DNA from: Guillardia theta CCMP2712
Taxonomy: Eukaryota > Protista > Cryptophyta
Direction of reading: 5' to 3'
NCBI RefSeq assembly: GCF_000315625.1
Contig: NW_005434578.1
Location: 173,045 to 237,044 of the forward strand
DNA length: 64,000 nucleotides
Below, in pieces: positions 5,270-63,505 of this stretch. The position numbers and the translations under genes were made by a program. Under the pieces are notes generated by a model, which made no database searches, was not told the DNA's origin, and was given only the letters and a program-made list of their open reading frames with translations. Each line of letters begins with the position of its first letter. Position 1 is the first letter of the stretch.

Positions 5270-8200
5270 CTACCGTCGCGTTCTGGGATCCATACCAAAC
5301 ACCTGCGCTTCGATCGCTTCATTGCCGCGGGTCCACCCGTACCTTGCAAGAATGCCTTTATTTTCCACATTCTTCACGCTGAAGCTGTTGAGAATCTCCT
5401 CGGGAACGACAAACACTATCTCCACCTTCCAGCCTTCCTCCTTCCCAATGCCCAAAAGTTGCAGGCACTTTGCCATGTATCGCAGTTTGAGGTCATGCGA
5501 CTGCCTAGTCGTTACCTGCACAAAGCGCACAAATTTTTCACTCCAGTCAACAATCACTGCATCGTAGCCCCCCTGATTCCATTTCAATGGCTTCAGGCAC
5601 ACCCTTGCTACTTTTGTCTTTTCCTGCAGCTTATGGATTTGCATAGCTTCCAGCCTTATCACGTTACATCTTTTCCAATCGTCGACTGTCACGGACCTCG
5701 TGGTAAGCTGCAGCCCTGCCCCTCGTATCCGAGCAAAGAACAGCATCTCAAACAACCAACCCCGAAGTGTCGGATTCCCAGTTGCGTCAACGAGTTCTTC
5801 AATCTTCCTCACAAACGTTTCTCCAAGCCTCTGTGCTAGCTCCATGGAAACAAACCTGCTGACAAGCGTCCAGTGCACCTCGTCTCCGACACGATACTTC
5901 CCATGCAGGCGATTCACAGCATTGTTTGCACGCTCTCCCATCCCCATGTCAAACAGGGACGCAAAATCAGGAACAGCCTCTATCCCGTCACGGAGTTCTT
6001 GGATCGCTTCATCTGTCCTACGTTCAAACATATATCGGCATGAGCCTCCTACAATCTGATACTTTGACTCGATTTCTCTCGACCTTCTCTCTTGTTCTGT
6101 CTCATCCATGCTTCCCTCGCCTTCATCCATGCTTCCCTCTTCTTCATCCAAGCTCCATTTCATCACATCAGCCACACTCTTATAGAACGCGTCGTACCTA
6201 CAGGCTTCCAGATACTCTTCCATTGTCCACGAATACACCATCATTTCTTCGACCTTCTCATTCGCATCTTGCTCGGAACTCTTCTTTGCTCGAGAGCTCA
6301 TCGACGTTGTGATAACAAGCCGCCGATTCTCCAGTTCACGATGAACCCAATACAGGCAAGCACTCAGCACAAATCCATGTGCTTGCTCCCCCTGTCGGTA
6401 ACCATCTATAGACACCAAAGTCTTCTTCCCGCTCGGTGCCCGTTCTCTGAGAAATTTCGGTATCCAAGCCCCCGCATTGTCGGCAGGCATCTCACATTTT
6501 CTCAATACGCCATCATCAACCTGTAAGAATTCGACAATTCCCCACTTCCACAGCCGAAAGCATATCACCCTCCATCCCTCCTCCATGCCTCGCGATTGCA
6601 TGAAGGACATCGTCGTCGTCGTCTTCCCCGTCCCCGGAGGCCCTAGAATCCAACCCAGACACCCCGCCTTGCACACCCGGTCGTCAAGGAAACGCCACTG
6701 CTCATTGAAGGAATCTCGGCAGTACAGCACACGCACCCCTGCTTGTGACGAGCTGATTGGATCAAACAGCGATCGATCGAGAAAGAAGAGTTTGTTCGCC
6801 TCCCTGTGCCCCACCAGATCACGACTCAAGGTTTTTTCTGTCCAAATTGCGCTTTCTGCCTCTTCCTCCCGGACCTCGGCCCTGTGTTTGTCAAGCACGA
6901 GCTCCTTCCTCTCAAGCTGACTGGTCAGCCGTTGCTTTTCTGCCGGGTCTTGGCACATCTCGATCTTGTGCTCGAGCTCCTTCTTCTCGAGCGTGAGCTT
7001 GTGCTCGAGCTCCTTCCTCTCGAGCTTGACCGTGTGCTCGAGCTCCTTCCTCTCAAGCTGACTGGTCAGCCGTTGCTTTTCTGCCGGGTCTTGGCACATC
7101 TCGATCTTGTGCTCGAGCTCCTTCCTCTCGAGCGTGAGCTTGTGCTCGAGCTCCTTCCTCTCGAGCTGACTGGTCAGCCGTTGCTTGTCTACCGGGTCTT
7201 GGCACATCTCGATCTTGTGCTCGAGCTCCTTCCTCTCGAGCTTGACCGTGTGCTCGAGCTCCTTCCTCTCAAGCTGACTGGTCAGCCGTTGCTTTTCTGC
7301 CGGGTCTTGGCACATCTCGATCTTGTGCTCGAGCTCCTTCCTCTCAAGCTGACTGGTCAGCCGTTGCTTTTCTGCCGGGTCTTGGCACATCTCGATCTTG
7401 TGCTCGAGCTCCTTCCTCTCGAGCGTGAGCTTGTGCTCGAGCTCCTTCCTCTCGAGCTTGACCGTGTGCTCGAGCTCCTTCCTCTCAAGCTGACTGGTCA
7501 GCCGTTGCTTGTCTACCGGGTCTTGGCACATCTCGATCTTGTGCTCGAGCTCCTTCCTCTCGAGCGTGAGCTTGTGCTCGAGCTCCTTCCTCTCAAGCTG
7601 ACTGGTCAGCCGTTGCTTTTCTGCCGGGTCTTGGCACATCTCGATCTTGTGCTCGAGCTCCTTCCTCTCGAGCTTGACCGTGTGCTCGAGCTCCTTCCTC
7701 TCAAGCTGACTGGTCAGCCGTTGCTTGTCTACCGGGTCTTGGCACATCTCGATCTTGTGCTCGAGCTCCTTCCTCTCGAGCGTGAGCTTGTGCTCGAGCT
7801 CCTTCCTCTCAAGCTGACTGGTCAGCCGTTGCTTTTCTGCCGGGTCTTGGCACATCTCGATCCGGCGCTGGATTTGTGAGATAGATTCCACCAGTATGCT
7901 CATTTCGTCTGTCTTGCTCTCCTCTTTCTCTTCATCTCGCCTGTATTGCTGTCTTGTTCCTTTTGGTCTTGCTTTCTCCTTTGACTTTTCATCCTGTCTG
8001 TCTTGCTGCATTGCTCTGCTTTTTCTTGCTCTCTTACTTTTGATCTTGTCGCGCTGCTTTTTCAATGTTGCGGTCTGGAAGACACAGTGAGAGGAACGCA
8101 GGAGAGTCAGGTTGTGAACAAAAGCATCAGGATTTGGGCATAAGCATGAGGAAGATGGGAAAGGAAATGAGAGTGGAGAAAGCAACGGTGACAGAAGAAA

Positions 8201-8479
8201 CAGTGGAGTTGCAACGGTAAAGCGCGCAAGGCAGTAAACCAAGAAATTGACAAGTGAATTACAGAAAACTACACTCACAGAGTTCAATTCAACTTTCTTC
8301 TCTGCCTCGTCCTCTCCGCCTTTCAAGCGTAGAGATAGAGGAGATCCAGTGCCTTGGCGCGACTTACGGCTCTTGAGCTTAGCATACTTTCCTGTCTCAA
8401 CGGATCGAAGCGCAGATTCGAAGGATAGGAAGAGCTGGAGGATGAGCAAAATTTCCAGAAAAAAATTCAATCCCCTCAT
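5270..8479 (-). CDS. Crinkler (CRN/CR)-family effector-like protein: signal peptide, LRLKGG motif, coiled-coil repeat array, P-loop NTPase, C-terminal restriction-endonuclease-like domain; one probable in-frame intron at 8075-8278
   Basis: NTPase motifs: LYCR...GWILGPPGTGKT (Walker A), LVSIDG (Walker B), WTMEEY, VGGSCRYMF. REase-like motifs: GWLFEMLFF...KPLKWNQGGYDAVIVD...FVQVT...H. These match my recollection of oomycete CRN C-terminal regions. Hydrophobic N-terminus. A 204-nt GTGAGT...TTCCAG segment is a multiple of 3 and reads through in the ORF track. Confidence 0.85.
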   Translation of the reverse strand: MRGLNFFLEILLILQLFLSFESALRSVETGKYAKLKSRKSRQGTGSPLSLRLKGGEDEAEKKVELNSVSVVFCNSLVNFLVYCLARFTVATPLFLLSPLLSPLSFPFPSSSCLCPNPDAFVHNLTLLRSSHCVFQTATLKKQRDKIKSKRARKSRAMQQDRQDEKSKEKARPKGTRQQYRRDEEKEESKTDEMSILVESISQIQRRIEMCQDPAEKQRLTSQLERKELEHKLTLERKELEHKIEMCQDPVDKQRLTSQLERKELEHTVKLERKELEHKIEMCQDPAEKQRLTSQLERKELEHKLTLERKELEHKIEMCQDPVDKQRLTSQLERKELEHTVKLERKELEHKLTLERKELEHKIEMCQDPAEKQRLTSQLERKELEHKIEMCQDPAEKQRLTSQLERKELEHTVKLERKELEHKIEMCQDPVDKQRLTSQLERKELEHKLTLERKELEHKIEMCQDPAEKQRLTSQLERKELEHTVKLERKELEHKLTLEKKELEHKIEMCQDPAEKQRLTSQLERKELVLDKHRAEVREEEAESAIWTEKTLSRDLVGHREANKLFFLDRSLFDPISSSQAGVRVLYCRDSFNEQWRFLDDRVCKAGCLGWILGPPGTGKTTTTMSFMQSRGMEEGWRVICFRLWKWGIVEFLQVDDGVLRKCEMPADNAGAWIPKFLRERAPSGKKTLVSIDGYRQGEQAHGFVLSACLYWVHRELENRRLVITTSMSSRAKKSSEQDANEKVEEMMVYSWTMEEYLEACRYDAFYKSVADVMKWSLDEEEGSMDEGEGSMDETEQERRSREIESKYQIVGGSCRYMFERRTDEAIQELRDGIEAVPDFASLFDMGMGERANNAVNRLHGKYRVGDEVHWTLVSRFVSMELAQRLGETFVRKIEELVDATGNPTLRGWLFEMLFFARIRGAGLQLTTRSVTVDDWKRCNVIRLEAMQIHKLQEKTKVARVCLKPLKWNQGGYDAVIVDWSEKFVRFVQVTTRQSHDLKLRYMAKCLQLLGIGKEEGWKVEIVFVVPEEILNSFSVKNVENKGILARYGWTRGNEAIEAQVFGMDPRTRR
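6898..7862 (-). repeat. Intragenic modular tandem array (33-bp and 75-bp units)
   Basis: Constant LERKELEH block followed by KLT, TVK or KIEMCQDP(AE/VD)KQRLTSQ; 9 CQDP units, near-identical at DNA level. Confidence 0.95.
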
Positions 8480-9475
8480 AATGGACAGTAGAAGTGCTGA
8501 AGTTCAAATCAATGTCTCTTGATGCCACGAGTATAGCTGAGAGAAATGCGAACGCGAATCAGATTATTTGGATATCTTTCAAGCCTGCAAGCAGATAAAT
8601 TGTCATGGGCAACAGGAGATGGTTCTGTTTAAGTTCATAATTGTGGAGTGGACCAGTTCGAACTTCACATCTCCCATCACCCTCTACCACAGCTCTACCT
8701 CACAAAAGTCAAAAGTTATTTTTTTTCTGCACACCTACTCGTACCACTTGGAATCAATCTTCATCTTTATCAAGTTCAATGTTGGTGCTACTTGAAGACT
8801 TCACGTTATCATATCCCCTTCTCTTTATCGGTACAAAGTTATTGTCCTTCCTTATCCCACTTCGCAGTTCAACTCAGTCCTCTCGTTTCCTAAGGAAATT
8901 GTCCTTTATTTCTGAGGCGTGTTCACTCGCTTCCACCTGATCTCCACTTCACTCATCGGTGCGATGCACATTTTCCTTTGCTTTCCACTTCCCTTCACTT
9001 TCCTTCGCTTTCCATTTCTCATCCTCACCTCACCTCTTGACACTCTGTTTCTGCTTTGACATGGCTTGTTGTGATTGATCTCTTCATCTTGGTTACTCTC
9101 TAGGCCGGCGGGAGACTCTGGCAGCGGCTCAGATAACCCCACCTCTGCAGCTCAGAGGAAGGGGTACTCTGCCCCCTTCCTCCCATATATCGCTCGACCT
9201 CTCCTCTCTCCTCTCTCCCTCTCCCTCCCTCCCTCTCGACTGCTCACTCTCTCTCCACCTCTTTCATTTATCTGGCTGTTTAAGGTTTATATGCAGAGGT
9301 TTATTAAGTCTTCCAAGGGGGCTGTATGAGGGCTCGAAAAGGGACCACAAATCAGATACTGAAAATCTGCAAGAGAATTTTAATATTATGTTTTACAATT
9401 CAATAATGTTTGCTCCGGTTCGGTTTTCTTTCCTCAGTCAGTAAACAGCTGCATAACCGTTGAACTGTAAAACAG

Positions 9476-9541
9476 GGTGTGGATGCTGGTTGGGTGCTGG
9501 TTGGGTGCTGGTTGGGTGCTGGTTGGATGTTGATTGGGTGT
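9476..9541. repeat. 11-bp minisatellite (GGGTGCTGGTT)n
   Basis: About 5-6 copies, degenerate at the edges. Confidence 0.8.
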
Positions 9542-9939
9542 TTATTGGTGATTCAATGAAGTAGAATAACTCTCTCCTCCGTACCTGGTTTCCTTCCTTC
9601 CTTCCTTCCTTCTTTGCTCAGTTTTCCCGGGTTCCGATTCCTTCGTTCCTCCTGGCTTCCTCCCCTTCACTGATCCATATGCCTGCCATCAGCCGCTGCG
9701 CCGCCTCCGCGAAGTCATCGGGCATGGGGACCTTTTCTGGCGCATTGAATGACTACCACCGTAAGTGCTCAGGTGCCGGGTGCTGTTTGACCACGCGTTC
9801 GAATCCTAAGGGCAATCGAAATCGGATTGCTTTTCAGCGTCCGATCAATTCCACTACCAGAATGCCCAAGACTTTTATGATTCTCGCCCACTCCTGAAAC
9901 CCGACTACCTACCCTGACTTCATCTCTTGTGAAACTTGA

Positions 9940-10930
9940 ACATCAGCGGCGGGTGGCCCGGGTGCAGAGCCTGGTGATGCCACGGATACTAGCCTGAGGG
10001 CCGTCGAGACTCGGAGCTCAGTGGCCCAGCCCACGGGAATTGCTCACTGTCAGCTGAAAAGGGGATCAGCCTGATACAAAAATCCTTGTGACGTGATCGG
10101 ACACTGCGGCTCCGACTCAGCGGCCGGGCGCCGCCGGGCCCGGGGCCTACTAGGCTAGGCTACTTGCAGCGCCGCCGGGCGAAGTTTAGTACGGATGCGG
10201 CGGTCACTGCGGCGCCGGGCGTAGGCTCCCGCACAGGCCCGCCTCAGAGCTGTGGGACTTCAAGCCGCTTCAACCGTATGTTGCCATGCATTATCCGCCC
10301 TCCGGTCCGGGAATACTTAACCCGGTTCCCTTTCGATAGGCGGCGCACCGAGATGCGCCCTTCACACGGAGACGGTTCCCCTATCAACTAGTATCTCCGA
10401 GTTAGGACCGACTAACTTAACCCATCATGTCCAATCACTTATCACCGTGGCACGGTAAGGCGGCGGCGGGGCGGACTCGACTCGCCGGACTCGGAGTCGC
10501 CGAGTCGCCGGGGAGTCCCCGGCCGGGAGCCTCCGCTTCAAGCAAGGCTTTGAAAGTTTACTCAAACGGTTGAGTATGTCACAGCGCCGGCGGGCACTGC
10601 CGCGCATCCCGGCCGGGCGTCCGGCGATGATGCCCGGCGCTGATCGGACCCACCGGTGACCGGCGTGAACTCCGGGACCGTGATGATCATATCACGCCGG
10701 TCCGCCGCCGTCGGATTGAAGTCGTCACTGACTGAGACTGGCGCGGCGGCCCCGCCGGCCATGGGGCAGAGACGTGACCGTACCGTCACTGTCACGGACG
10801 GTCGGACCGTACTACGTGACCGGCCCGGCCGGGTCACGGCGCCCGCCCGGGTCCCGGGTGCCGCGTGACGGTGCCGCCCGGGCCGCAGACGGTGCGGCGC
10901 GCCCTCAGTGGCAGACTCAGGCGGAGGCGA
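9940..10930. other. GC-rich palindrome/micro-duplication island 2, upstream of the CCDC112-like gene
   Basis: ACTCGACTCG, GAGTCGCCGAGTCGCC, CCGTACCGT and similar words; TTTACTCAAA at 10557-10566; contains the rRNA fragment. Confidence 0.65.
10283..10450 (-). rRNA. Degenerate fragment (pseudogene) of eukaryotic 28S/LSU rRNA interrupted by short insertions
   Basis: The minus strand reads TTGGACATG..GGTTA..GTCGGTCCTAA..GAGATA..GGGGAAC..TCCGT.TGAAGGGCGC...GCGCCGCCTATCGAAAGGGAACCGGGTTAA.TATTCCCGGACCGG. This is colinear with the conserved LSU segment GTTGGACATGGGTTAGTCGATCCTAAGAGATAGGGGAACTCCGTTT...ATCGAAAGGGAATCGGGTTAATATTCCCGAACC, which I recalled from memory. Confidence 0.8.
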
Positions 10931-11409
10931 GCCTGCTTCAGATTGCCTACCCCTCCCTTGGATCCGACGGCGAACAACCACCCCACCCATGGGATCAAGG
11001 CGCAAGGGTACTACCGTGATAGGGAATGGCGGGAAGGAGGGATCAGAATGGAGGAGGGGATTGAATGAAATATGCGCGAGTTGAAACAGATATGAGATGG
11101 ATCTGATCATCATGAACGCACAGAAGATTGATACGTGAGCTAGGCAGGAGCAGGATGAATGTAAAGGAGGAGGAGGAGGAGGTAGTCGTACTGCTCGGCT
11201 TTCGACATACGTTGGAGTTGATGGGACAGGATCTATCAGACACATGCCCCTTGATGCTGATGCGCTCATGCAACCCAGAACCTCTTGACCCCACCACTCT
11301 CCTTGCATGCTGAGAAAGCATGAGAGGGTCGCACTGCCATGGCGCGAACTGAATTGACCATCATCGCAGACCACGAGGAGGAGTGAGGCGCAGGAAGCGG
11401 AATGAGCAG

Positions 11410-14008
11410 ATGAACCGGGCGATATCAACACCTTCAGGTAACAGAAGAGATCACCGCTCCCTTCCTCTGCTCTTGCTTGCTCTCTGACTCTTTTCGTCGC
11501 AGCTGCCCACAGGAGCAGGCACACAGCAGAGGAGGACAAGGTTGCGGCATGGACAGCGCATGTGCGGAAGTCCAAAGCGTGACAGGATTGGGCCTGACCT
11601 GTCGCAGGCGCATCAGTTATGGACGAGATCGAAGGCTGCTCACAAGCACAGAGACGCATCTCTGAACAACATGCGAGGAGAACTGGGCAAGGAGGTATGC
11701 TGCCTGCTGTCGTATGGGCAGGTTCTGACAGGCTGATAGGTGACGGAGGCGGAGGAGCATCAGAGGAAGCTGGCGAGGTGGAGCTAGAGGTTGAATTGCG
11801 ATAGGGAGTTAGCTGACATGCTTCTCTTGCTCCCAGCCAAAGGAAGGAGGAAGCTGCTTTGCTCATGGGCCAGCTATCGCAAGTTCGGCAGAACGTGGAT
11901 AGTTTGCGGTCGATGATCCAGGCGCGAGGAAGAGGGCCCGAGTACATCGAGAGGTTGCGGGGAACGATGGACAGCATTGAAAACGAGATCTATCTGGTGA
12001 GGAATCAGGAGCAGGAGCATTTGGAGTTCCTCACCAGCGAGGAGAAAACCCTCAATGCCGAGTTGGCGGCGCTAGAGAGGTCGATCCAGGAATGGGCGAC
12101 CTCGGACGGGGATAACCGTGTAAGACCCTCCACAGCAGGAGCCTCTTTGTCCTCCAAGCAGGAAGCCATGCCGGTGCAGAGCAAGATAGGAAGGATGCTG
12201 AGCCAACCCCTGCTCCCGCCCGAGGTCGTTGCTGTCGATCGGATCCTCAAGGAGGAAGGAGGGAGTACAGGAGGCTGGGACGACGCGGATCACGAGAGAT
12301 TCTTGCGGTACCGGACTCAGTTCAAAGGCCAGCCGCACATCTACTGCGCTAAGACGGCAGATGACCTCCCCGACCATGACCTTGCATCTGTCGAGAGGCA
12401 CGAGCTGTGGTACACAAGGTACCTGACGCTGCTAGAGAAGAAGCGTGAGGCCATCAGGTCATGGAGGACGAACAGGCAGCACGAGCAGGAAGAGCAGCGC
12501 ACCAACACAACCGTGACCAAGGAGGAGGCGCCTTCTCGCCGTCCCCAGTCGGCCAAGAGCTCAAGCAGGGATGCTGATGTGTCGAGAGAGGAAGTGAAGG
12601 AGAAGTTACAGAAGTGGAAGGAGAGCAAGGAGAACGAGAGGCTGCAGAAGCAGGAGGAGGTGATGTAGCAGATGCTGCTGTGTGTGCTTGCTGACATGAG
12701 TCATAGGAGGCCAAGGCAGAGAGGGAGCGGGCAGAACGGGAGAAGTTGAGGAAGGAAAAGGAACGGCTGGAGAAGGTGATGAGAGTGGAGAACTACAAAA
12801 AGAGCAAGAAGGTCAGTTGCGATCTCACAAAACGTCTGAGTGTAAATGATGACGACGATTTGATCGCAGGCGGAGGAAGAGGCGAAGAAGAGAGAGGAAG
12901 AGTTTCAGCAAGAGCAGAACAAGTCCAAGGTACCCCCCTCCATCCTCTCCGAAGTTCATTTGGTGTTCTGACCATCTAAACAGATTTCTGCCGAGCAGCT
13001 GGAGCGGATCAGAGTCAGGAACAAGAAGGTTGGCAGCTTCACTCTCCTCCCCCTCCATCCCTGACATGTCGGAACCAGCAAACAGAAGAGCATATCAACC
13101 TGATCCGCAGGAAGGAGGAGCAAGAGCGGATCAAGGTCTTCCTCCTACCCTTGCTCTTGCTCCCCTCCTTGTCTCACCGGCTGCTGCAGACGCAGAGGAT
13201 GGAAGCTCTTCTTGAGCACGTCGATGCCCCCAAGATTGATCGAGATCCCAACAGGCTCGTCGCTCCCACCACTGCCAGGTATCCCTCTTGCTCCCTTCCC
13301 CCTTCATACCTCCTCCTTCCCTCCCCTTTGCCTTATTCCTCCTCCCCCTCCTTCCTACTCCTACATCCTCCTCCTCCTCCTTCACAACAAGATTCCATCT
13401 GATGATCTGGCGTGAGAGCATTGAAACAAACACTGAGGCCCTCAAAATCCTGCATCAAGTCCAGCAGACACAGATACGGAAATTCTTCTTGGAGTGGAGT
13501 GTCAAAGTTGTTCATCGCAGAATCATAGTAAGCAGTGTCCATTCTATTCCGCTCTTCTCTCTGCTTACTCTGATTGCAGANNNNNNNNNNNNNNNNNNNN
13601 NNNNNNNNNNNNNNNNNNNNNNNNNNNNNNNNNNNNNNNNNNNNNNNNNNNNNNNNNNNNNNNNNNNNNNNNNNNNNNNNCCTCCTCCTCCCTCCCTCCC
13701 TCCCTCCCTCCCTCCCTCCCTCCCTCCCCTCCCTCCCTCCCTCCCTCCGCCCCCCCCCCCCCCTAACCCACCCTCCTACCACCGCCTGCTCCTCTCCCTC
13801 CTGTGTGTAACCGCCCCCCCCTCGCCCCTTGCGTGTCTTCCTCCACTATCATGCTGTGTTGGTTGAGCTGCTGGCTGTCAGCATGGCGAAGTCGGAGCTG
13901 GAGTCACCGGACGAGAAGAACACACGAGGATACTACTCCATCATGAGACCCAACACAGTCATGCACGTTGCTGCTCGGGCGACCCCGACATGGCGGTCGG
14001 GGATGTGA
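11410..14008 (+). CDS. CCDC112: CCDC112-like coiled-coil protein (multi-exon; spans an N-gap)
   Basis: GGSTGGWDDADHERFL...LPDHDLASVERHELWY...KKREAIRSWR core; IDRDPNRLVAPT; C-terminal HVAARATPTWRSGM*. Exons joined by short GT-AG introns; the start is approximate. Confidence 0.75.
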
Positions 14009-18265: not shown

Positions 18266-19351
18266 GCAACTTCGTAAGCACGAGATGAAACAGAGGAGAG
18301 GGAAGAGGAGGAGGAGGAGGAGGAGGAGGAGGAGGAGGAGGAGGAGGAGGAGGAGGAGGAGGAGGAGGAGGAGCTGCAGGAGTCGGAGGGGGAGCACGAG
18401 CACGAGAGCGAGAGGGAGTGAGGAGGAAGAGGAGGAGGAGAACTGGCTGATCGTTGTGCATACTCTTCGCTATCGCGTCCAGGTGTTAGGGCATTTCTCA
18501 TGGCGATGAAGAAGTGCCTGGCCGCGGGAGGAGAAGGTGCGGNNNNNNNNNNNNNNNNNNNNNNNNNNNNNNNNNNNNNNNNNNNNNNNNNNNNNNNNNN
18601 NNNNNNNNNNNNNNNNNNNNNNNNNNNNNNNNNNNNNNNNNNCATGTTGTCCTCCTCTCCTCATCTGAAGAGAGCATGTTGTCCTCCTCTCCTCTCCTTG
18701 ACTTGTCGCTCCTCTCTGTACAGGCATCACAATCACCTTTCAACTCGCCTTCCTTTTGTTACTCCTGCACTCTTGGATATTTCCAGCATCTTGCCAATTG
18801 AATCCTCGTTTTTATCGTTGGCGCGATGAGGCACTCATGCTAGTAAAAGGTGCACGATCAAAGACAAGTGTGTGACCAACAAGTTGGTGTAAATTGATAT
18901 TAACGAAGCTGCTCCATTTGCATGTAAACATGTACAAATAAGGAATGTTGAAAACTGTTGTTGGTGGAAATTACATGAACAGTCTAGAATGTGAGCTCAT
19001 GGGCTAACAGACATTTGACTTGTGTTCTGCTTCTACGATTGGAGGTGTAGGAGTCTGAAGAGCTTGTCTGCAGGTCATGGAAGATCTTGAAAAGAATTTC
19101 AGCAAGCTGTCATGCAGCAATGTTGAAACCACTATATCTGAAGCTCCTGGGGAAAGAGGGGGGAGGGGGAGGCCTCGACAGGCACATGGAGGGGCTTCAG
19201 GAGAAGTCGGGGATGCCCAAGAGGAAGAGAGAAGAAGATGATGATGTTTATTGGCATGAGGAGGTGGAGGAGGAGGAGGAGGAGGAGGAGGAGGAGGCGG
19301 AGGATGGGTGAGGAGGAAGAGGAGGCGGAGGATGATGATGATGGGCGAGAC

Positions 19352-41620: not shown

Positions 41621-42429
41621 GCGTATCTCGAAACATCTCATCTCTTCCCATCCCCATTCAATCCAACCTCCTGTTGTCTCGCTTCGTCTCAGATGAGATC
41701 TTATCTTGTCAGAATGTCCTTCAACCATGAATTGCTTCTGCCACTTGTTGCCCTCGCATCCTTTCTTCTTTTTTCAAGTCTTGCTCTTCATCTTCTTTTG
41801 TTTGTTTCACCGTCTCATCGTCATCCAATCTCATGATTATTCACTCGAGCCCTTCTACTTTATCCTTGATCCCTGCGTCTCCCTCGCCCTGTTTCAAAAG
41901 CCTGTCTCTCCCTCCCTCCCNNNNNNNNNNNNNNNNNNNNNNNNNNNNNNNNNNNNNNNNNNNNNNNNNNNNNNNNNNNNNNNNNNNNNNNNNNNNNNNN
42001 NNNNNNNNNNNNNNNNNNNNCCCTCCCTCCCTCCCTCCCTCCCTCCCTCCCTCCCTCCCCTCCCTCCCTCCCTGCATCGCTCGCTCGCTTCAATCCTCCT
42101 TTTCTTCCTCCATTCCTTCCTTCCTTCCCAGGAATAACTTCAACCATGTCCTTGCTTCCTTCAACTCCAATTTGATTGCAAATTCTTGCCAGCCCTCCAC
42201 TCAAGACCTTTACCTCTTGTGGTCAATCTATCTACCAACTCCTTCTATCTACCAACTCCCTCTGCCCCTGCCCCTGCCTCTGCCCCTGCCCCTGCCCCTG
42301 CCCTGCTTCTCCTGCTGCTTCTTGGTATGCCCCTACCTCCTCTCCTGGCCCCTCCTCTGCGTATCCCCCTCCTCCGCTCGGTTTTCCCCTCCCTCCCTTC
42401 CCTCTTCGTGCATTGCGAAAAGGTCAGCG

Positions 42430-44846: not shown

Positions 44847-45740
44847 CAAGGGGAAACAAGGAGCATGCGGAGTGTGGCAGTGGAGTGAGGATAGCTTCGG
44901 GTGTGGAGAGGTAGCAAGGCATGGGAAAGCTTCTGATAGTGCGCTGTTGTATGCAAGTTTAATCCGTTATCTTACATGCAAGGGCCTCTAGCAGACTCCT
45001 TCATACCTCCTTCCTCATACTGTACATGCCGACATCTCTCCAAGTCTTGTCTGTTTGATTGCTCTGCTCCACTCTCGTCCTCAAGCATCCCGTCTCCTCC
45101 ATCCCTGCGCTTGACCTGCCGCCTTCTCCTGGCGCTGAGATGTGACAACAATGTGTCCTTGCGCTCGAGCCTCCTCGAATGAGGCAAGGAGCTCTGATTG
45201 GATACGAGCCAAGCAGCGACGGCAGTTGCAGCTTGTCATCTGATGGGCTGAGTGCTGCATCAGTATGCAGCCGCTCGCCATGACTTGCGGTCTTCTCTGC
45301 TCGCCAACTGCGGTCATCCGAGCAGAATCGTTGGGGGCTCGTAAGCTGCGAGCTGGGGAGGCTGGAGGATGCGTCTTCATGATGAGCTCGCTGTGGCGTC
45401 TGCGAGGGACCTGTTTCGATGGCCGAGCGCATTCGCCCAGCCTCTTCTCCGACATGTCTGATCGCAAAGGGTCCCATGACACAACAGCGCTCAAGACTTT
45501 GTAGAGGTTGGAGATGGCGACTTGGAGAGTGAGGAGGAGCCCAACCTTGGTCTTGCCTGCCAAGAGAGAGTGCGAGGATGCGTCGCCATTGATCAGGAGG
45601 TCGACAAGAGAAGGCATGCTGGTGCTGCTGCTGCGCGTGGTGGTGCTAGTGCGCGTGTTGGTGCAGTGGGCCTGGTCTAGTCAAGTAAAGGGCAAAGGGG
45701 TTTACTACAGGAGTATTTTACTACAGAGATCGGAGATCAA
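44847..45740. repeat. 894-bp direct repeat, copy 1 (carries a 178-aa minus-strand ORF at 45081-45617)
   Basis: Near-identical to 46535-47428 (offset 1688), with only scattered substitutions. Confidence 0.95.
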
Positions 45741-46534
45741 AAACAAAAATGGCCAGGAGCCTCCGCTCCAGGAGTTATAAGGTTTTATATAGACCAAAAG
45801 TCTCCTGCGGTTTGTGAGGGTCCAAAGTTAAGTTTACTAGTGAGCTTATATGATAGTAGTGGTAACACGGGGAGAAGAGAAGAGACAAGCAACCCTTATC
45901 CGCCCCACTGCTGCTATGCCCCTGGCAAACTTGAAACTGATACTGGTCTCTTCACTGCGCCGCGCGCAGGACCATTCCCTCGCCGGCGTGCGTGCCAGCT
46001 CACTCCGCCATGTACGGTCGGGCTGTGGCCGCCGCCGAAGGAATGAGACGCATACAGTACCGGAACGCACCTGCGATTATGGCAGCGAAGGACAGGGAGG
46101 CCTTGAGCTGACGAAAGATGCTGGACCGGATGCGGCAGTTTTCAAGTCGGATCACCTGACTCCGACATCTTGCAAGGCCGCTAAGAGGCCATCCAGCGCT
46201 GCCGTTCCCTTGTTCGCCGAGCGGTCTGCCAGCCACCACAGAACTTTCGAAAGCGCAACTCATCATCCTGGAACTTCCGAGTCCATCATCAGTACTGGCG
46301 ATGATGGGAAGAAAGGCCTTTGGCGGGACGTGCTGAGCATATTCATTTCCATGCCCTCGGATCTTCCTCTGTGCTGCTGCTTACAGCAAGTTTGCTCCGA
46401 GTCAGGTCCGGAACCCCATAATAGTCACAGTTTCAAAAACATGTGACATGCTCAAGTCCAGGAAAAATCGGCCTCCAGTAGCCTGCATTGGCACCAAAAA
46501 CCAGAAGGGGGAGGGCAGCAAGGGGAAAGGGCAG

Positions 46535-47428
46535 CAAGGGGAAACAAGGAGCATGCGGAGTGTGGCAGTGGAGTGAGGATAGCTTCGGCTGTGGAGAGGT
46601 AGCAAGGCATGGGAAAGCTTCTGATAGTGCGCTGTTGTATGCAAGTTTAATCCGTTATCTTACACGCAAGGGCCTCTGGTAGACTCCTTCATACCTCCTT
46701 CCTCATACTGTACATGCCGCCATCTCTTCGAGTCTTGTCTGTTTGTCTGCTCTGCTCCACTCTCGTCCTCAAGCATCCCGTCTCCTCCATCCCTGCGCTT
46801 GACCTGCCGCCTTCTCCTGGCGCTGAGATGTGACAACAATGTGTCCTTGCGCTCGAGCCTCCTCGAATGAGGCAAGGAGCTCTGATTGGATACGAGCCAA
46901 GCAGCGACGGCAGTTGCAGCTTGTCATCTGATGGGCTGAGTGCTGCATCAGTATGCAGCCGCTCGCCATGACTTGCGGTCTTCTCTGCTCGCCAACTGCG
47001 GTCATCCGAGCAGAATCGTTGGGGGCTCGTAAGTTACGAGCTGGGGAGGCTGGAGGATGCGTCTTCATGATGAGCTCGCTGTGGCGTCTGCGAGGGACCT
47101 GTTTCGATGGCCGAGCGCATTCGCCCAGCCTCTTCTCCGACATGTCTGATCGCAAAGGGTCCCATGACACAACAGCGCTCAAGACTTTGTAGAGGTTGGA
47201 GATGGCGACTTGGAGAGTGAGGAGGAGCCCAACCTTGGTCTTGCCTGCCAAGAGAGAGTGCGAGGATGCGTCGCCATTGATCAGGAGGTCGACAAGAGAA
47301 GGCATGCTGGTGCTGCTGCTGCGCGTGGTGGTGCTAGTGCGCGTGTTGGTGCAGTGGGCCTGGTCTAGTCAAGTAAAGGGCAAAGGGGTTTACTACAGGA
47401 GTATTTTACTACAGAGATGGGAGATCAA
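46535..47428. repeat. 894-bp direct repeat, copy 2 (carries a 178-aa minus-strand ORF at 46769-47305)
   Basis: Near-identical to 44847-45740. Confidence 0.95.
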
Positions 47429-47589
47429 GAAGTGCTACTAGTGTTTTATCTGGAGCTAAGTCTCCTTTATATTGTACCTGCTTCGACCGGGCTGTGTAGT
47501 AAAACTTCTTTTTGATAATTTTTTTTGGCAAGTGATGAGGGTCGGTGAGTCTTTTACTCAACGATAAGTAAACAATCAGTACGAGGACA

Positions 47590-48200
47590 ATCAGGATAGT
47601 TTTATAATACTATGATAAAAGACTGACTCGGCGGCGCGTCGGTCGTGACACCGATGGCCCGGCCCGCCGCGGGCCTGGCCGGCGCCTGGCCGGCAGGTGC
47701 CACGGTGAGAGCAATCGGATTCTTTGAGTAACATAAAAGCCCGTGATCGGATCCGGTTCCGAGACCGGGCCGTGCCTGGCACTGCTCAGTGACACTGACC
47801 GGACTGCGGCACCGGCGCCGCGGGCAGCAACTTTGAGTAAAAAGGGCAAGGTCACCAGTACGGTCAGGCCGCGGGGCCCCGCTTCAGATAACTTCTACTG
47901 GCAGGCACTGTTACTCTCAGAGTCTTGAAAATCGGGCGGCCGGGCCGGGGTAGTAGTTGCCCGGTGTGGCAGTCGGCGGCCCGGACTCTGGCATGTCACA
48001 GTGTGGCCACTGGCGGCCGGGCGCATTTCAGTATCGGAGGACTAGTATTGTTGTGCCAGTGACCATGATCATACTAGGGCGAGTCCGCCACGATGTGGGA
48101 TGAGGCGAGTGAAAGAGGCCCGGGACTCGCGTGGCACTCAGGCCTGGCAGTGCCACCCGGTGACCGGGCCCCGCCGGCGCCGGTCGCCGGACCGTGCACA
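47590..48200. other. GC-rich micro-duplication island 4, immediately upstream of ODR-4
   Basis: CCGG/GGCC-dense; TTTGAGTAAA at 47832, TTTGAGTAAC at 47723; TTTACTCAAC at 47553 just outside the island. Confidence 0.6.
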
Positions 48201-55149: not shown

Positions 55150-55570
55150 CCGAGCCCGCCCCCGGTAACTTATAAGTGCTTTTTAGGGTCGTGCCGGATT
55201 CCGAGGCGGCTCGCCGCCGTCCCGCCGGGATCGGATCGGGCTTCGGACTCCGGGATATGATGCCGGCCCGGGGCCGGAGTCGGCCGGCGGCCCGCCGGGC
55301 TCCGGCCCGGGGCTCGGCGGCCTTGCCAGTGGGTCGCCGGACCTGGCCAGTGTCGGCCGGCCGGGAACTCACGGCCCTGCCGCGCTGCCAGTCTGAATTA
55401 TAAGTGAATGTCGCCGGCCGGGCGGCGCCGTCCGACCACTGTCATGGAGTCCGTGCCGAGCTTGACCATGTGACTATCTGAGCGGCCTAGTAACTAGTAA
55501 GAACTCGGGCGACTAGCGACTCCTTGGGAAGGGGTCCTCGGATCCGTCTAGTCGCCGTGCCGTGACCCGC
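55150..55570. other. GC-rich micro-duplication island 5, upstream of the P-loop kinase gene
   Basis: GGATCGGATCGG, CCGGCCCGGGGCCGG, CTAGTAACTAGTAA at 55487. Confidence 0.55.
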
Positions 55571-61924: not shown

Positions 61925-62009
<85 letters not shown>

Positions 62010-62055
62010 GGATTGGGGGAGGTTAGGAAGGGATGAGGAGGAACCTGAGGATTTA

Positions 62056-63505
62056 CTAGCTATCAGTAAAGAAGAGACGAACAAGAGTTGCGAGCATCGC
62101 AACGAAGAAGAGGATGTAGAGCTTGAGCAGCTCCTCCTTCTCCTTCCTGACCCCATCCGTGAACCCTTTCAGATCCTCCCGCCTTTGCTTCCTGATCTCA
62201 TGCGCAAGCTGCTTCGCCTGCTCGCAGCCTTCAGCGTATCCACTCTCCTCATCTCATCACTCTCCATCTTCCTCCTCCTCAACTCCCCATCGTTCACTCT
62301 CCCTCCTCCCCGTACCACTCCTCCTCCTCCTCCTCCTCCTCNNNNNNNNNNNNNNNNNNNNNNNNNNNNNNNNNNNNNNNNNNNNNNNNNNNNNNNNNNN
62401 NNNNNNNNNNNNNNNNNNNNNNNNNNNNNNNNNNNNNNNNNNNNNNNNNNNNNNNNNNNNNNNNNNNNNNNNNNNNNNNNNNNNNNNNNNNNNNNNNNNN
62501 NNNNNNNNNNNNNNNNNNNNNNNNNNNNNNNNNNNNNNNNNNNNNNNNNNNNNNNNNNNNNNNNNNNNNNNNNNNNNNNNNNNNNNNNNNNNNNNNNNNN
62601 NNNNNNNNNNNNNNNNNNNNNNNNNNNNNNNNNNNNNNNNNNNNNNNNNNNNNNNNNNNNNNNNNNNNNNNNNNNNNNNNNNNNNNNNNNNNNNNNNNNN
62701 NNNNNNNNNNNNNNNNNNNNNNNNNNNNNNNNNNNNNNNNNNNNNNNNNNNNNNNNNNNNNNNNNNNNNNNNNNNNNNNNNNNNNNNNNNNNNNNNNNNN
62801 NNNNNNNNNNNNNNNNNNNNNNNNNNNNNNNNNNNNNNNNNNNNNNNNNNNNNNNNNNNNNNNNNNNNNNNNNNNNNNNNNNNNNNNNNNNNNNNNNNNN
62901 NNNNNNNNNNNNNNNNNNNNNNNNNNNNNNNNNNNNNNNNNNNNNNNNNNNNNNNNNNNNNNNNNNNNNNNNNAGGGAGGGAGGGGGTGGGGGAATGAGA
63001 GGCAAGGGAATAGGAGCAGGTGGGAGTGGTTATAGTAGAGAGGACAAGGAGCAGAAACGATAACAGGAGCTGGGAAGGGAAAAGGAGGAGAAGGAGGAGG
63101 AGGAGGAGGAGGAGGAGGAGGAAGAGAAAAGGAGGGAGAAGAGAAGCAGGAGGAGGAGGAGACCTTGGGGTCGACGGTCCACCAGTCTGTGGTTGGCTGA
63201 TCGAGGTTGACAGACATGAAGAGGACAGGAGATTCTCTTTGCCGCAGAAACCTGGAGGAAAAATCATCCCATGCTCTCATCAACTGCTGGTGCTGGTGCT
63301 GGTGCTGGTGCTGGTGCTGGTGCTGGTGCTGGTGCTGGTGCTGGTGCTGATGATGGTGGTGGTGGTGGTGGTAGTGGTGGTGGTGGTGGTGGTGCTGCTG
63401 CTGCTGCTTTCCTCTGCTCTCCCCCTCTGCCTCCTCACTCACGGTGCTTTGTTCATCGCAAGCGCGAAGACGGAGCCGTAGTAGTCGACAGGAACTTTAC
63501 CTAGG
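62056..63505 (-). CDS. 3' exons of a membrane-anchored protein, possibly patatin-like; 5' part lies beyond the window
   Basis: Exons LGKVPVDYYGSVFALAMNKAP, LMRAWDDFSSRFL..DWWTVDPK and SGYAEG...LYILFFVAMLATLVRLFFTDS* (C-terminal TM); spans an N-gap. The family assignment is weak. Confidence 0.4.

What the first reader, a model, noticed from the sequence alone, without database searches (positions are those of the whole stretch)
10283..10450. 28S rRNA fragment records a micro-duplication process in the GC islands
Seen, on the + strand, against the conserved LSU sequence: ACGG-AG-[ACGG] (~10366), TATC-[AACTAG-TATC] (~10382), CTC-[CGAG] (inverted copy, ~10395), TAAC-[T-TAAC] (~10413), CAT-[CAT] (~10423) and probably ATCAC-[TT-ATCAC] (~10434). 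That is about six insertions in ~90 bp, each copying 3-5 adjacent bases directly or inverted, sometimes with filler, while substitutions are few. Known: transposon excision footprints and fill-in repair of staggered double-strand breaks leave this kind of signature. Inference: this DNA has been cut and repaired, or hit by insertion and excision, many times. The rRNA piece is the only place where the ancestral sequence can be read.
Basis: partly seen in the sequence, partly recalled or inferred. Interest (0 to 1): 0.85.

Follow-up and report, generated by a model that had tools for sequence, protein, structure and literature searches.

The report
Captured rRNA fragment riddled with micro-insertions
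A short dead copy of the alga's own large-subunit rRNA gene sits in a hairpin-rich GC island; it matches the real gene at every aligned base but is interrupted by eight tiny insertions, so it records an unusual insertion-only kind of DNA damage and repair.

Summary
Window 10277-10436 (minus strand) is a 133-nt piece of the host's own LSU rRNA, from a Guillardia theta CCMP2712 scaffold. High-depth rDNA contigs from two independent runs lie on it with 0 substitutions. They lack exactly C (10316), ACGG (10372-75), 10 nt (10386-95) and CGAG (10398-401). All 27 related LSU genes from metagenomes also lack TTAAC (~10417) and CAT (~10426). Three read sets carry the three central insertions, so they are not assembly errors.

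New here:
- The 23 LSU bases that should abut 10277 lie 425 nt away at 10702-10729, with two more insertions.
- An inverted copy of that piece flanks the fragment.
- A second version of 10348-10678 differs by indels only.

Three insertions are clear direct copies of adjacent bases (junction homology P about 0.005). The "inverted copy" is not above chance. The sixth claimed event lies outside the rRNA homology. The insertions do not add hairpins more than random ones would.

Best reading: a young rDNA fragment captured at a break-prone island and altered by insertion-biased repair. One complex event versus many events is unresolved. Other first-stage notes report such islands elsewhere in this genome; I did not test them.

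The parts
10277..10436 (-). Main LSU rRNA fragment: 133 nt of host sequence plus 27 inserted nt. Non-functional, with no substitutions.
   Evidence: Rfam RF02543 match. Host rDNA contigs show 0 other letters over 10277-10416. The panel of 27 LSU loci agrees. The true LSU runs on differently before 10277 (loose ends in X7, X12, X22).
10316..10316 (+). 1-nt insertion (C). Not a copy of a neighbour.
   Evidence: Left out in the rDNA contigs of X1, X7 and X12, and in 21 of 22 RNA reads of X22.
10372..10375 (+). 4-nt insertion ACGG. It copies the ACGG that lies 6 nt upstream.
   Evidence: Left out in X1 rDNA contig record 6, depth 1339. Absent in 27 of 27 panel LSUs.
10386..10395 (+). 10-nt insertion AACTAGTATC. 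Its last 4 nt repeat the TATC just before it, with 6 nt of filler.
   Evidence: Five equivalent placements.
10398..10401 (+). 4-nt insertion CGAG. It forms CTC-C-GAG, which is not above chance.
10413..10421 (+). 5-nt insertion (TTAAC or an equivalent placement): TAAC-T-TAAC.
   Evidence: Absent in 27 of 27 panel LSUs. Present in the X12 contig. Host reads were not shown for this site.
10423..10428 (+). 3-nt perfect tandem duplication, CAT CAT.
   Evidence: Absent in 27 of 27 panel LSUs. Present in the X12 contig.
10702..10729 (-). Second LSU piece: the 23 nt that directly abut 10277 in the true gene, displaced 425 nt. It carries insertions GAT (10714-16) and CG (10723-24).
   Evidence: Smith-Waterman score 37 against shuffles at 22.3 +/- 2.4, P<0.002. 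The query was the true LSU continuation read from the loose ends.
10214..10267 (.). Left arm of an imperfect inverted repeat whose partner is 10712-10759. It holds an inverted copy of the second LSU piece, including that piece's insertions.
   Evidence: 12-nt core 92% complementary (pair I22). Extended alignment score 33, P=0.03.
10712..10759 (.). Right arm of the inverted repeat.
10443..10450 (+). 8 nt present here and in X12 but absent from the X1 and X7 contigs. With it the sequence reads CCGTG-G-CACGG, a 5-bp hairpin.
   Evidence: table 4 and records 7, 11 and 22.
10100..10900 (.). GC-rich (68%), CpG-rich island dense in short hairpins and short direct repeats. It hosts the rRNA pieces.
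   Evidence: Hairpins z=5.8 and direct repeats z=6.5 against dinucleotide shuffles. CpG observed/expected is about 1.2 against a window median of 0.70.

Best explanation
This is a young, non-functional fragment of the alga's own nuclear LSU rDNA (domain III region). At least 156 nt survive, now in two pieces. It was captured in antisense orientation in a break-prone, hairpin-rich CpG/GC island between genes. Since capture it has changed only by small insertions: 8 events of 1-10 nt, 32 nt in total.

About half of the insertions repeat the bases next to them. That is the product expected when short staggered or resected ends are filled in and rejoined, or when a repair polymerase slips back and re-copies. 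I take this as the signature of insertion-biased, error-prone repair acting repeatedly in the island. The same region has also undergone an inverted duplication and exists in a second version that differs only by indels.

Shown: the origin from host rDNA, the list of insertions, the absence of substitutions, the presence in independent reads, and the second piece. Inferred: the capture at a break, the enzymes involved, and that there were several events rather than one.
For: - Host rDNA contigs are identical to the fragment apart from the insertions, and 27 of 27 related LSUs lack the inserted bases.
- Junction homology of the insertions exceeds chance, P=0.005-0.007.
- A second LSU piece carries two more insertions and no substitution, P<0.002.
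- The left inverted-repeat arm copies that piece together with its insertions, so those insertions came before the inverted duplication.
- The X1 and X7 contigs over 10348-10678 differ from the window by 19 gap letters and 0 substitutions, and they diverge at 10678. The X12 contig matches the window exactly.
- The island is enriched in short hairpins and short direct repeats, as are three other islands in the window.
- Contrast within the window: the 897-nt duplicate 44847-45743 / 46535-47431 shows 13 substitutions and no indel.
- Known chemistry supports the reading: 1-4 bp de novo duplications from trapped Top2 plus NHEJ (bioRxiv 10.1101/2020.05.03.075358), and short foldback and distant templated insertions at breaks (PMC11724301).
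Against: - Five of the six insertions in the main piece lie in its right-hand 40 nt (binomial P about 0.01, post hoc). That polarity suits one error-prone synthesis run.
- The insertions do not create hairpins beyond chance, so the link to the island's palindromes is indirect.
- The new k-mers they create are not enriched elsewhere in the window.
- Whether the indel-only second version is an allele, a paralogue or partly a graph artefact of the Logan contigs cannot be told.
- There is only one locus. No other rDNA fragment occurs in the window.
Confidence: 0.5

Rival explanations
1. One complex event. While the rDNA (or rRNA) piece was being copied into a break, a low-processivity polymerase or reverse transcriptase repeatedly dissociated, slipped back and switched template. 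The micro-insertions, the displaced piece and the inverted copy were all laid down in one go, and nothing has happened since.
For: Zero substitutions means the fragment is young. The insertions cluster toward one end of the fragment (positions 94-125 of 133). The displaced and inverted LSU pieces look like template switches. Polymerase theta and foldback synthesis are known to make such mosaics (PMC4912351, PMC11724301).
Against: The inverted copy carries the second piece's insertions and has diverged further from it by small gaps. A second version of 10348-10678 differs by 19 indel letters. Both need either later events or further error-prone copying.
Confidence: 0.3
2. The insertions are footprints of repeated insertion and excision of a DNA transposon: a target-site duplication plus a few leftover or palindromic bases.
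For: TATC-AACTAG-TATC and TAAC-T-TAAC look like 4-bp target duplications with filler. The region holds other repeats: a ~30-copy element lies at 9778-9935.
Against: Copy lengths and fillers are not uniform. ACGG is not adjacent to its source. C, CGAG, GAT and CG show no duplication. No transposase or terminal-repeat family was seen at the sites.
Confidence: 0.1
3. The fragment comes from the nucleomorph LSU rDNA rather than the nuclear one. That would make it a nucleomorph-to-nucleus transfer.
For: The depth ratio of the matching rDNA contigs to single-copy sequence is 21-26 in two runs. That equals 6 nucleomorph rDNA copies (6 from my own knowledge of the genome's layout) times the ploidy of 4 given in the table of PMC4757882.
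Against: The inferred host sequence is 93% identical to L010. L010 is a tandem nuclear-type unit (5S, spacer, SSU, 5.8S, LSU) with 38-57% GC. Only one high-depth LSU type lies on the fragment at 80% likeness. If that type were the nucleomorph's, the nuclear one should have been laid on it too. The fragment is 58% GC.
Confidence: 0.07
4. Artefact: the extra bases are errors of the Sanger-era assembly in a GC-rich, hairpin-prone stretch.
For: The X1 and X7 contigs differ from the window by small indels in both island flanks.
Against: The same X1 and X7 locus contigs keep the insertions at 10372-10401. The X12 contig matches 10277-10736 with no difference but 10316.
Confidence: 0.03

Closest known systems
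Orphan rDNA fragments, and templated insertions from distant loci captured at double-strand breaks (yeast Break-Ins studies, PMC11724301)
   Same: A short piece of a highly transcribed multicopy donor sits at an unrelated locus, is non-functional, and lies next to inverted copies.
   Different: Captured pieces are normally faithful copies. This one carries eight internal micro-insertions and is split and partly inverted.
Polymerase-theta / synthesis-dependent microhomology end joining with templated insertions (PMC4912351, PMC5068794, PMC9303309)
   Same: Short insertions copy nearby sequence, directly or after snap-back, sometimes with untemplated filler.
   Different: Those scars sit at a single junction and usually come with deletions. 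Here there are no deletions in the main piece, the events spread over about 60 nt, and only the direct copies exceed chance.
Top2-initiated, NHEJ-dependent de novo duplications of 1-4 bp (bioRxiv 10.1101/2020.05.03.075358; PMC8795545)
   Same: Pure small duplications of unique sequence. The size mode is near 4 bp, with no substitutions.
   Different: Several events here carry filler (1 and 6 nt) or are not duplications at all. No evidence ties Top2 to these islands.
DNA transposon excision footprints
   Same: Direct repeats of 3-4 bp flank a few extra bases.
   Different: No constant duplication length, no element ends, no shared target motif.
Short template-switch mutations that create hairpins (my own knowledge: Loytynoja and Goldman 2017; Monttinen and Loytynoja 2022)
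   Same: The island is rich in short hairpins. One polymorphic 8-nt insertion makes a perfect 5-bp hairpin (10445-10455).
   Different: Within the calibrated rRNA piece the insertions do not form hairpins beyond chance.

Membership tests
Functional eukaryotic LSU rRNA gene (Rfam RF02543) | Scores at or above the family's gathering score (50 bits) and covers the whole model. | tested here: not met
   No hit at gathering over the window. 22.8 bits for model positions 1534-1664 only.
Pseudogene fragment of the host's own rDNA | Near-identity to the host's own high-copy rDNA, with homology ending abruptly at both sides. | tested here: met
   0 other letters against the rDNA contigs. The true LSU continues differently before 10277. 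Homology ends at 10436 against the panel.
Pseudogene fragment of the host's own rDNA | Not expressed as its own RNA. | tested here: inconclusive
   21 of 22 RNA reads over 10316 are true rRNA reads, and no locus-specific reads were seen. Only about 6% of one run was read.
Templated micro-insertions of end joining (TMEJ / NHEJ fill-in) | The inserted bases copy sequence adjacent to the junction more often than chance. | tested here: met
   Junction homology P=0.007 and P=0.005. The looser any-copy test is not significant.
Templated micro-insertions of end joining (TMEJ / NHEJ fill-in) | Dependence on Pol theta, Ku/Lig4 or a defined nuclease. | not testable with these tools
   Needs genetics in the alga.
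DNA transposon excision footprint | Constant target-site duplication length, with element termini or a donor family. | tested here: not met
   Copy lengths are 3, 4, 4 and an offset 4, and four events show no duplication. No related element was found in the window.
Nucleomorph-derived nuclear insert (NUNM) | The donor is the nucleomorph rDNA, not the nuclear rDNA. | tested here: inconclusive
   The closest relative L010 is a nuclear-type tandem unit, which argues against. The depth ratio of 21-26 fits 6 x 4 copies (PMC4757882), which argues for.
Hairpin-forming template-switch mutation | The insertions raise local self-complementarity beyond random insertions. | tested here: not met
   MFE -40.2 against -40.7 +/- 3.1. 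Hairpin count 14 against 14.1 +/- 2.0.

The most novel reading that the evidence does not exclude
The GC/CpG islands of this cryptophyte genome are sites of a recurrent, strongly insertion-biased break-and-repair (or template-slippage) process. It adds 1-10 bp at a time far faster than bases are substituted, and so builds island sequence de novo. On this reading the rRNA fragment is the first calibrated record of the process, at 8 or more insertions per 156 nt with no substitution.
Probability: 0.35. Interest if true: 0.75.

Novelty: new variant of a known kind. Interest (0 to 1): 0.55.

Why it matters
Stray rDNA fragments and small templated insertions are both known. A fragment that stays base-for-base identical to its donor while collecting eight insertions is not the usual decay pattern.

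If the process is recurrent and confined to the islands, it would explain how the hairpin-rich, CpG-rich intergenic islands of this genome arise. It would also give a natural example of insertion-biased mutation. Because the donor sequence is known exactly, the fragment is a ready assay target for tests with mutation-accumulation lines, break mapping or repair mutants.

Tried and rejected
- **Inserted bits as recurring island "words".** ACTAGT and TAACTTAAC do recur in other islands. But the new 8- and 9-mers made by the insertions recur elsewhere no more often than the ancestral ones: 62% against 65%, and 21% against 25%. Rejected.
- **Hairpin-forming insertions.** Not supported.
- **Other rDNA fragments in the window.** None found with full rDNA units of relatives as queries. 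There is also no second copy of the island within the window.
- **The duplicated pair 44847 / 46535 as a natural experiment for island growth.** Homology simply ends and the neighbouring ORFs are unrelated.
- **First metagenome pattern.** It required a G after TTAA and found nothing, because the true gene lacks that base.
- **Fetching the same locus from other assemblies by exact protein.** This failed for three ORFs. Only the reference scaffold was returned.
- **The divergent right flank of the second version.** It is not in the window.
- **A protein-database search for the second version.** I did not run it. The chance of success seemed too low for its cost.
- **Literature search for palindromic islands in this alga.** It found nothing relevant.

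Full report
**What is there.** The window comes from scaffold JH993060.1 of assembly GCA_000315625.1. From my own knowledge that accession is Guillardia theta CCMP2712. The nearest protein relative of a window gene is from the cryptophyte Hanusia phi, at 77% identity. The window has no Rfam hit at gathering. When only 10262-10462 is searched, the minus strand matches LSU_rRNA_eukarya positions 1534-1664 at 22.8 bits, E 8e-4. From my own knowledge this is domain III.

**Test against the conserved sequence.** A pattern scan of metagenome contigs returned 27 eukaryotic LSU genes. In a MAFFT alignment every one of them lacks the following bases of the window: ATG/CAT after GGACATG, 5 nt in GGTTA^GTCGG, CTCG after CCTAA, 10 nt after GAGAT, 4 nt after GGGGAAC, and one G in GGTTAA^TATT (rRNA-sense orientation).

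**Test against the host's own gene.** I laid four public runs on 9400-12100 at 80% likeness.
- High-depth contigs lie on 10277-10416 with zero other letters. Their depths are 1340-1560 against 64 for single-copy sequence in X1, and 171 against 6-8 in X7.
- These contigs lack 1 nt at 10316, 4 nt at 10372, 10 nt across 10378-10389 and 4 nt at 10397-10399.
- Before 10277 they run on into the true LSU continuation, so the homology ends there.
- Of 22 RNA reads over 10316, 21 lack the extra C. They are therefore ordinary rRNA reads, and the locus itself was not seen as RNA.
- The low-depth locus contigs of X1 and X7 keep the central insertions.
- A contig of a metagenome run (X12) matches 10277-10736 with no difference except 10316.

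The host gene does not contain the extra bases, and they are not consensus errors.

**Tally.** Removing the six insertions leaves 133 nt with no substitution and no deletion relative to the host reads (10277-10416) or the invariant panel columns (10417-10436).

A second piece appeared when I aligned the 30 nt of true LSU continuation to the island. Window 10702-10729 holds the 23 bases that should abut 10277, interrupted by GAT and CG. The score is 37 against 22.3 +/- 2.4 for shuffles, P<0.002.

The total is 8 insertions (32 nt) and 0 substitutions in 156 nt. For contrast, an 897-nt duplicate elsewhere in the window shows 13 substitutions and no indel. That duplicate is probably coding, so it is not a fair neutral control.

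**Are the insertions copies of neighbours?** Three have 3-4 nt of terminal direct homology (TATC, TAAC, CAT).
- The summed junction homology is 12 against 4.4 +/- 2.4 for random inserts, P=0.007.
- At least 3 of 6 with 3 nt or more gives P=0.005.
- ACGG repeats a 4-mer 6 nt upstream.
- A looser test, any copy within 12 nt on either strand, is not significant (P=0.72).
- The "inverted" CGAG and the single C are not distinguishable from random.
- The insertions raise neither hairpin count nor folding energy beyond random insertions.
Its neighbour TCACCGTGGCAC recurs at 47697.

**Context.** The fragment lies in a 68% GC island (10100-10900).
- CpG observed/expected is about 1.2 against a window median of 0.70.
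- The island has 2.5 times the short hairpins and twice the short direct repeats of dinucleotide shuffles (z 5.8 and 6.5).
- Islands at 2200-2600, 47700-48000 and 55200-55500 behave alike, and gene bodies do not.
- An imperfect inverted repeat, 10214-10267 / 10712-10759, brackets the fragment. Its left arm is an inverted copy of the second LSU piece including that piece's insertions. Those insertions therefore came before the inverted duplication.
- X1 and X7 hold a contig over 10348-10678 that differs from the window by 19 gap letters and no substitution. One difference is an 8-nt stretch at 10443 that completes the hairpin CCGTG-G-CACGG. The contig then diverges at 10678 into sequence not found in the window.
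- Its depth is 1.5-3 times single copy, so the segment probably exists in two or three copies.
- Just upstream, 9778-9935 is a repeat of about 30 copies with a tRNA box-B-like motif.

**Nuclear or nucleomorph donor.** The inferred donor is 93% identical to L010. L010 is a tandem unit ordered 5S, spacer, SSU, 5.8S, LSU with 38-57% GC, which is a nuclear-type arrangement. Only one high-depth LSU type lies on the fragment. This favours the nuclear gene.

One caveat remains. The depth ratio of 21-26 equals six nucleomorph rDNA copies (six is my own knowledge) times the ploidy of four in the table of PMC4757882. That paper also states that nucleomorph-derived nuclear inserts have not been found in this alga. 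I put the nucleomorph reading at about 7%.

**Mechanism.** Pure small duplications arise when staggered ends are filled in and joined. An example is trapped Top2 plus NHEJ, which gives 1-4 bp duplications (bioRxiv 10.1101/2020.05.03.075358). Short foldback inversions and the capture of distant sequences at breaks are documented (PMC11724301). Polymerase theta alternates between templated and untemplated extension (PMC4912351).

The simplest account has three steps:
- An rDNA piece was captured at a break in a break-prone island.
- The region has since been hit by further insertion-biased repair.
- The region also underwent an inverted duplication.

I give this 0.5. A single complex copying event gets 0.3. 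It is favoured by the clustering of five of six insertions in the right-hand 40 nt of the fragment (post hoc P about 0.01). Repeated transposon visits get 0.1, and assembly artefact 0.03.

**Novelty.** A literature search found no description of such islands or of this pattern in the alga. Other first-stage notes on this genome describe similar islands and micro-insertions between repeat copies. They are untested leads. This is one locus, so I rate it a new variant of known break-repair scars, of moderate interest.

Noticed in passing
window 9778-9935: A repeat of roughly 30 copies per genome: depth about 2150 against 64 for single copy. It carries a tRNA box-B-like GTTCGAATCC and is probably a tRNA-derived SINE. 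Copies differ by substitutions and by 2-5 nt gaps. One variant replaces 9936-10025 with 38 other letters.
   Followed up: partly
window 26 (whole-window profile), islands at 2200-2600, 10100-10900, 47700-48000, 55200-55500: CpG observed/expected has a window median of 0.70 but is 1.0-1.3 in the GC islands. These look like CpG islands in a genome that may be CpG-depleted by methylation. The islands share mixed-composition words such as TTTGAGTAA, TGATCGGA and GTACGGTC.
   Followed up: partly
window 5270-8479 (-): A 1069-aa ORF with weak AAA_14 and effector-associated-domain hits, and 108-nt tandem repeats at 6998-7862.
   Followed up: no
window 44847-45743 and 46535-47431: A direct duplicate of 897 nt at 98.6% identity, with 13 substitutions and no indel. 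Homology stops abruptly at both ends.
   Followed up: partly
window 11244-12062, run X12: A run labelled freshwater metagenome holds both a near-identical copy of this locus and a relative about 5% diverged. That is odd for an alga I know as marine.
   Followed up: no
window 10219-10400, run X22: All rRNA-derived read pairs have their first mate on the minus strand, which is the rRNA sense strand. That is the opposite of what a dUTP-type stranded library gives. The library type was not checked.
   Followed up: no
window 10163: Three data sets show three different letters at this one position: C in the window, A in X1, G in X7.
   Followed up: no
L025 4089-4207; L010 9415-9534: In the related metagenome rDNA units a 5S gene lies about 130 nt downstream of the LSU on the same strand. 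The 5S gene is therefore linked to the rDNA repeat.
   Followed up: no
window 13501-13750, 18501-18750, 41751-42000, 62251-63000: Runs of N (assembly gaps). The low GC value at 62001-63000 is due to them.
   Followed up: partly
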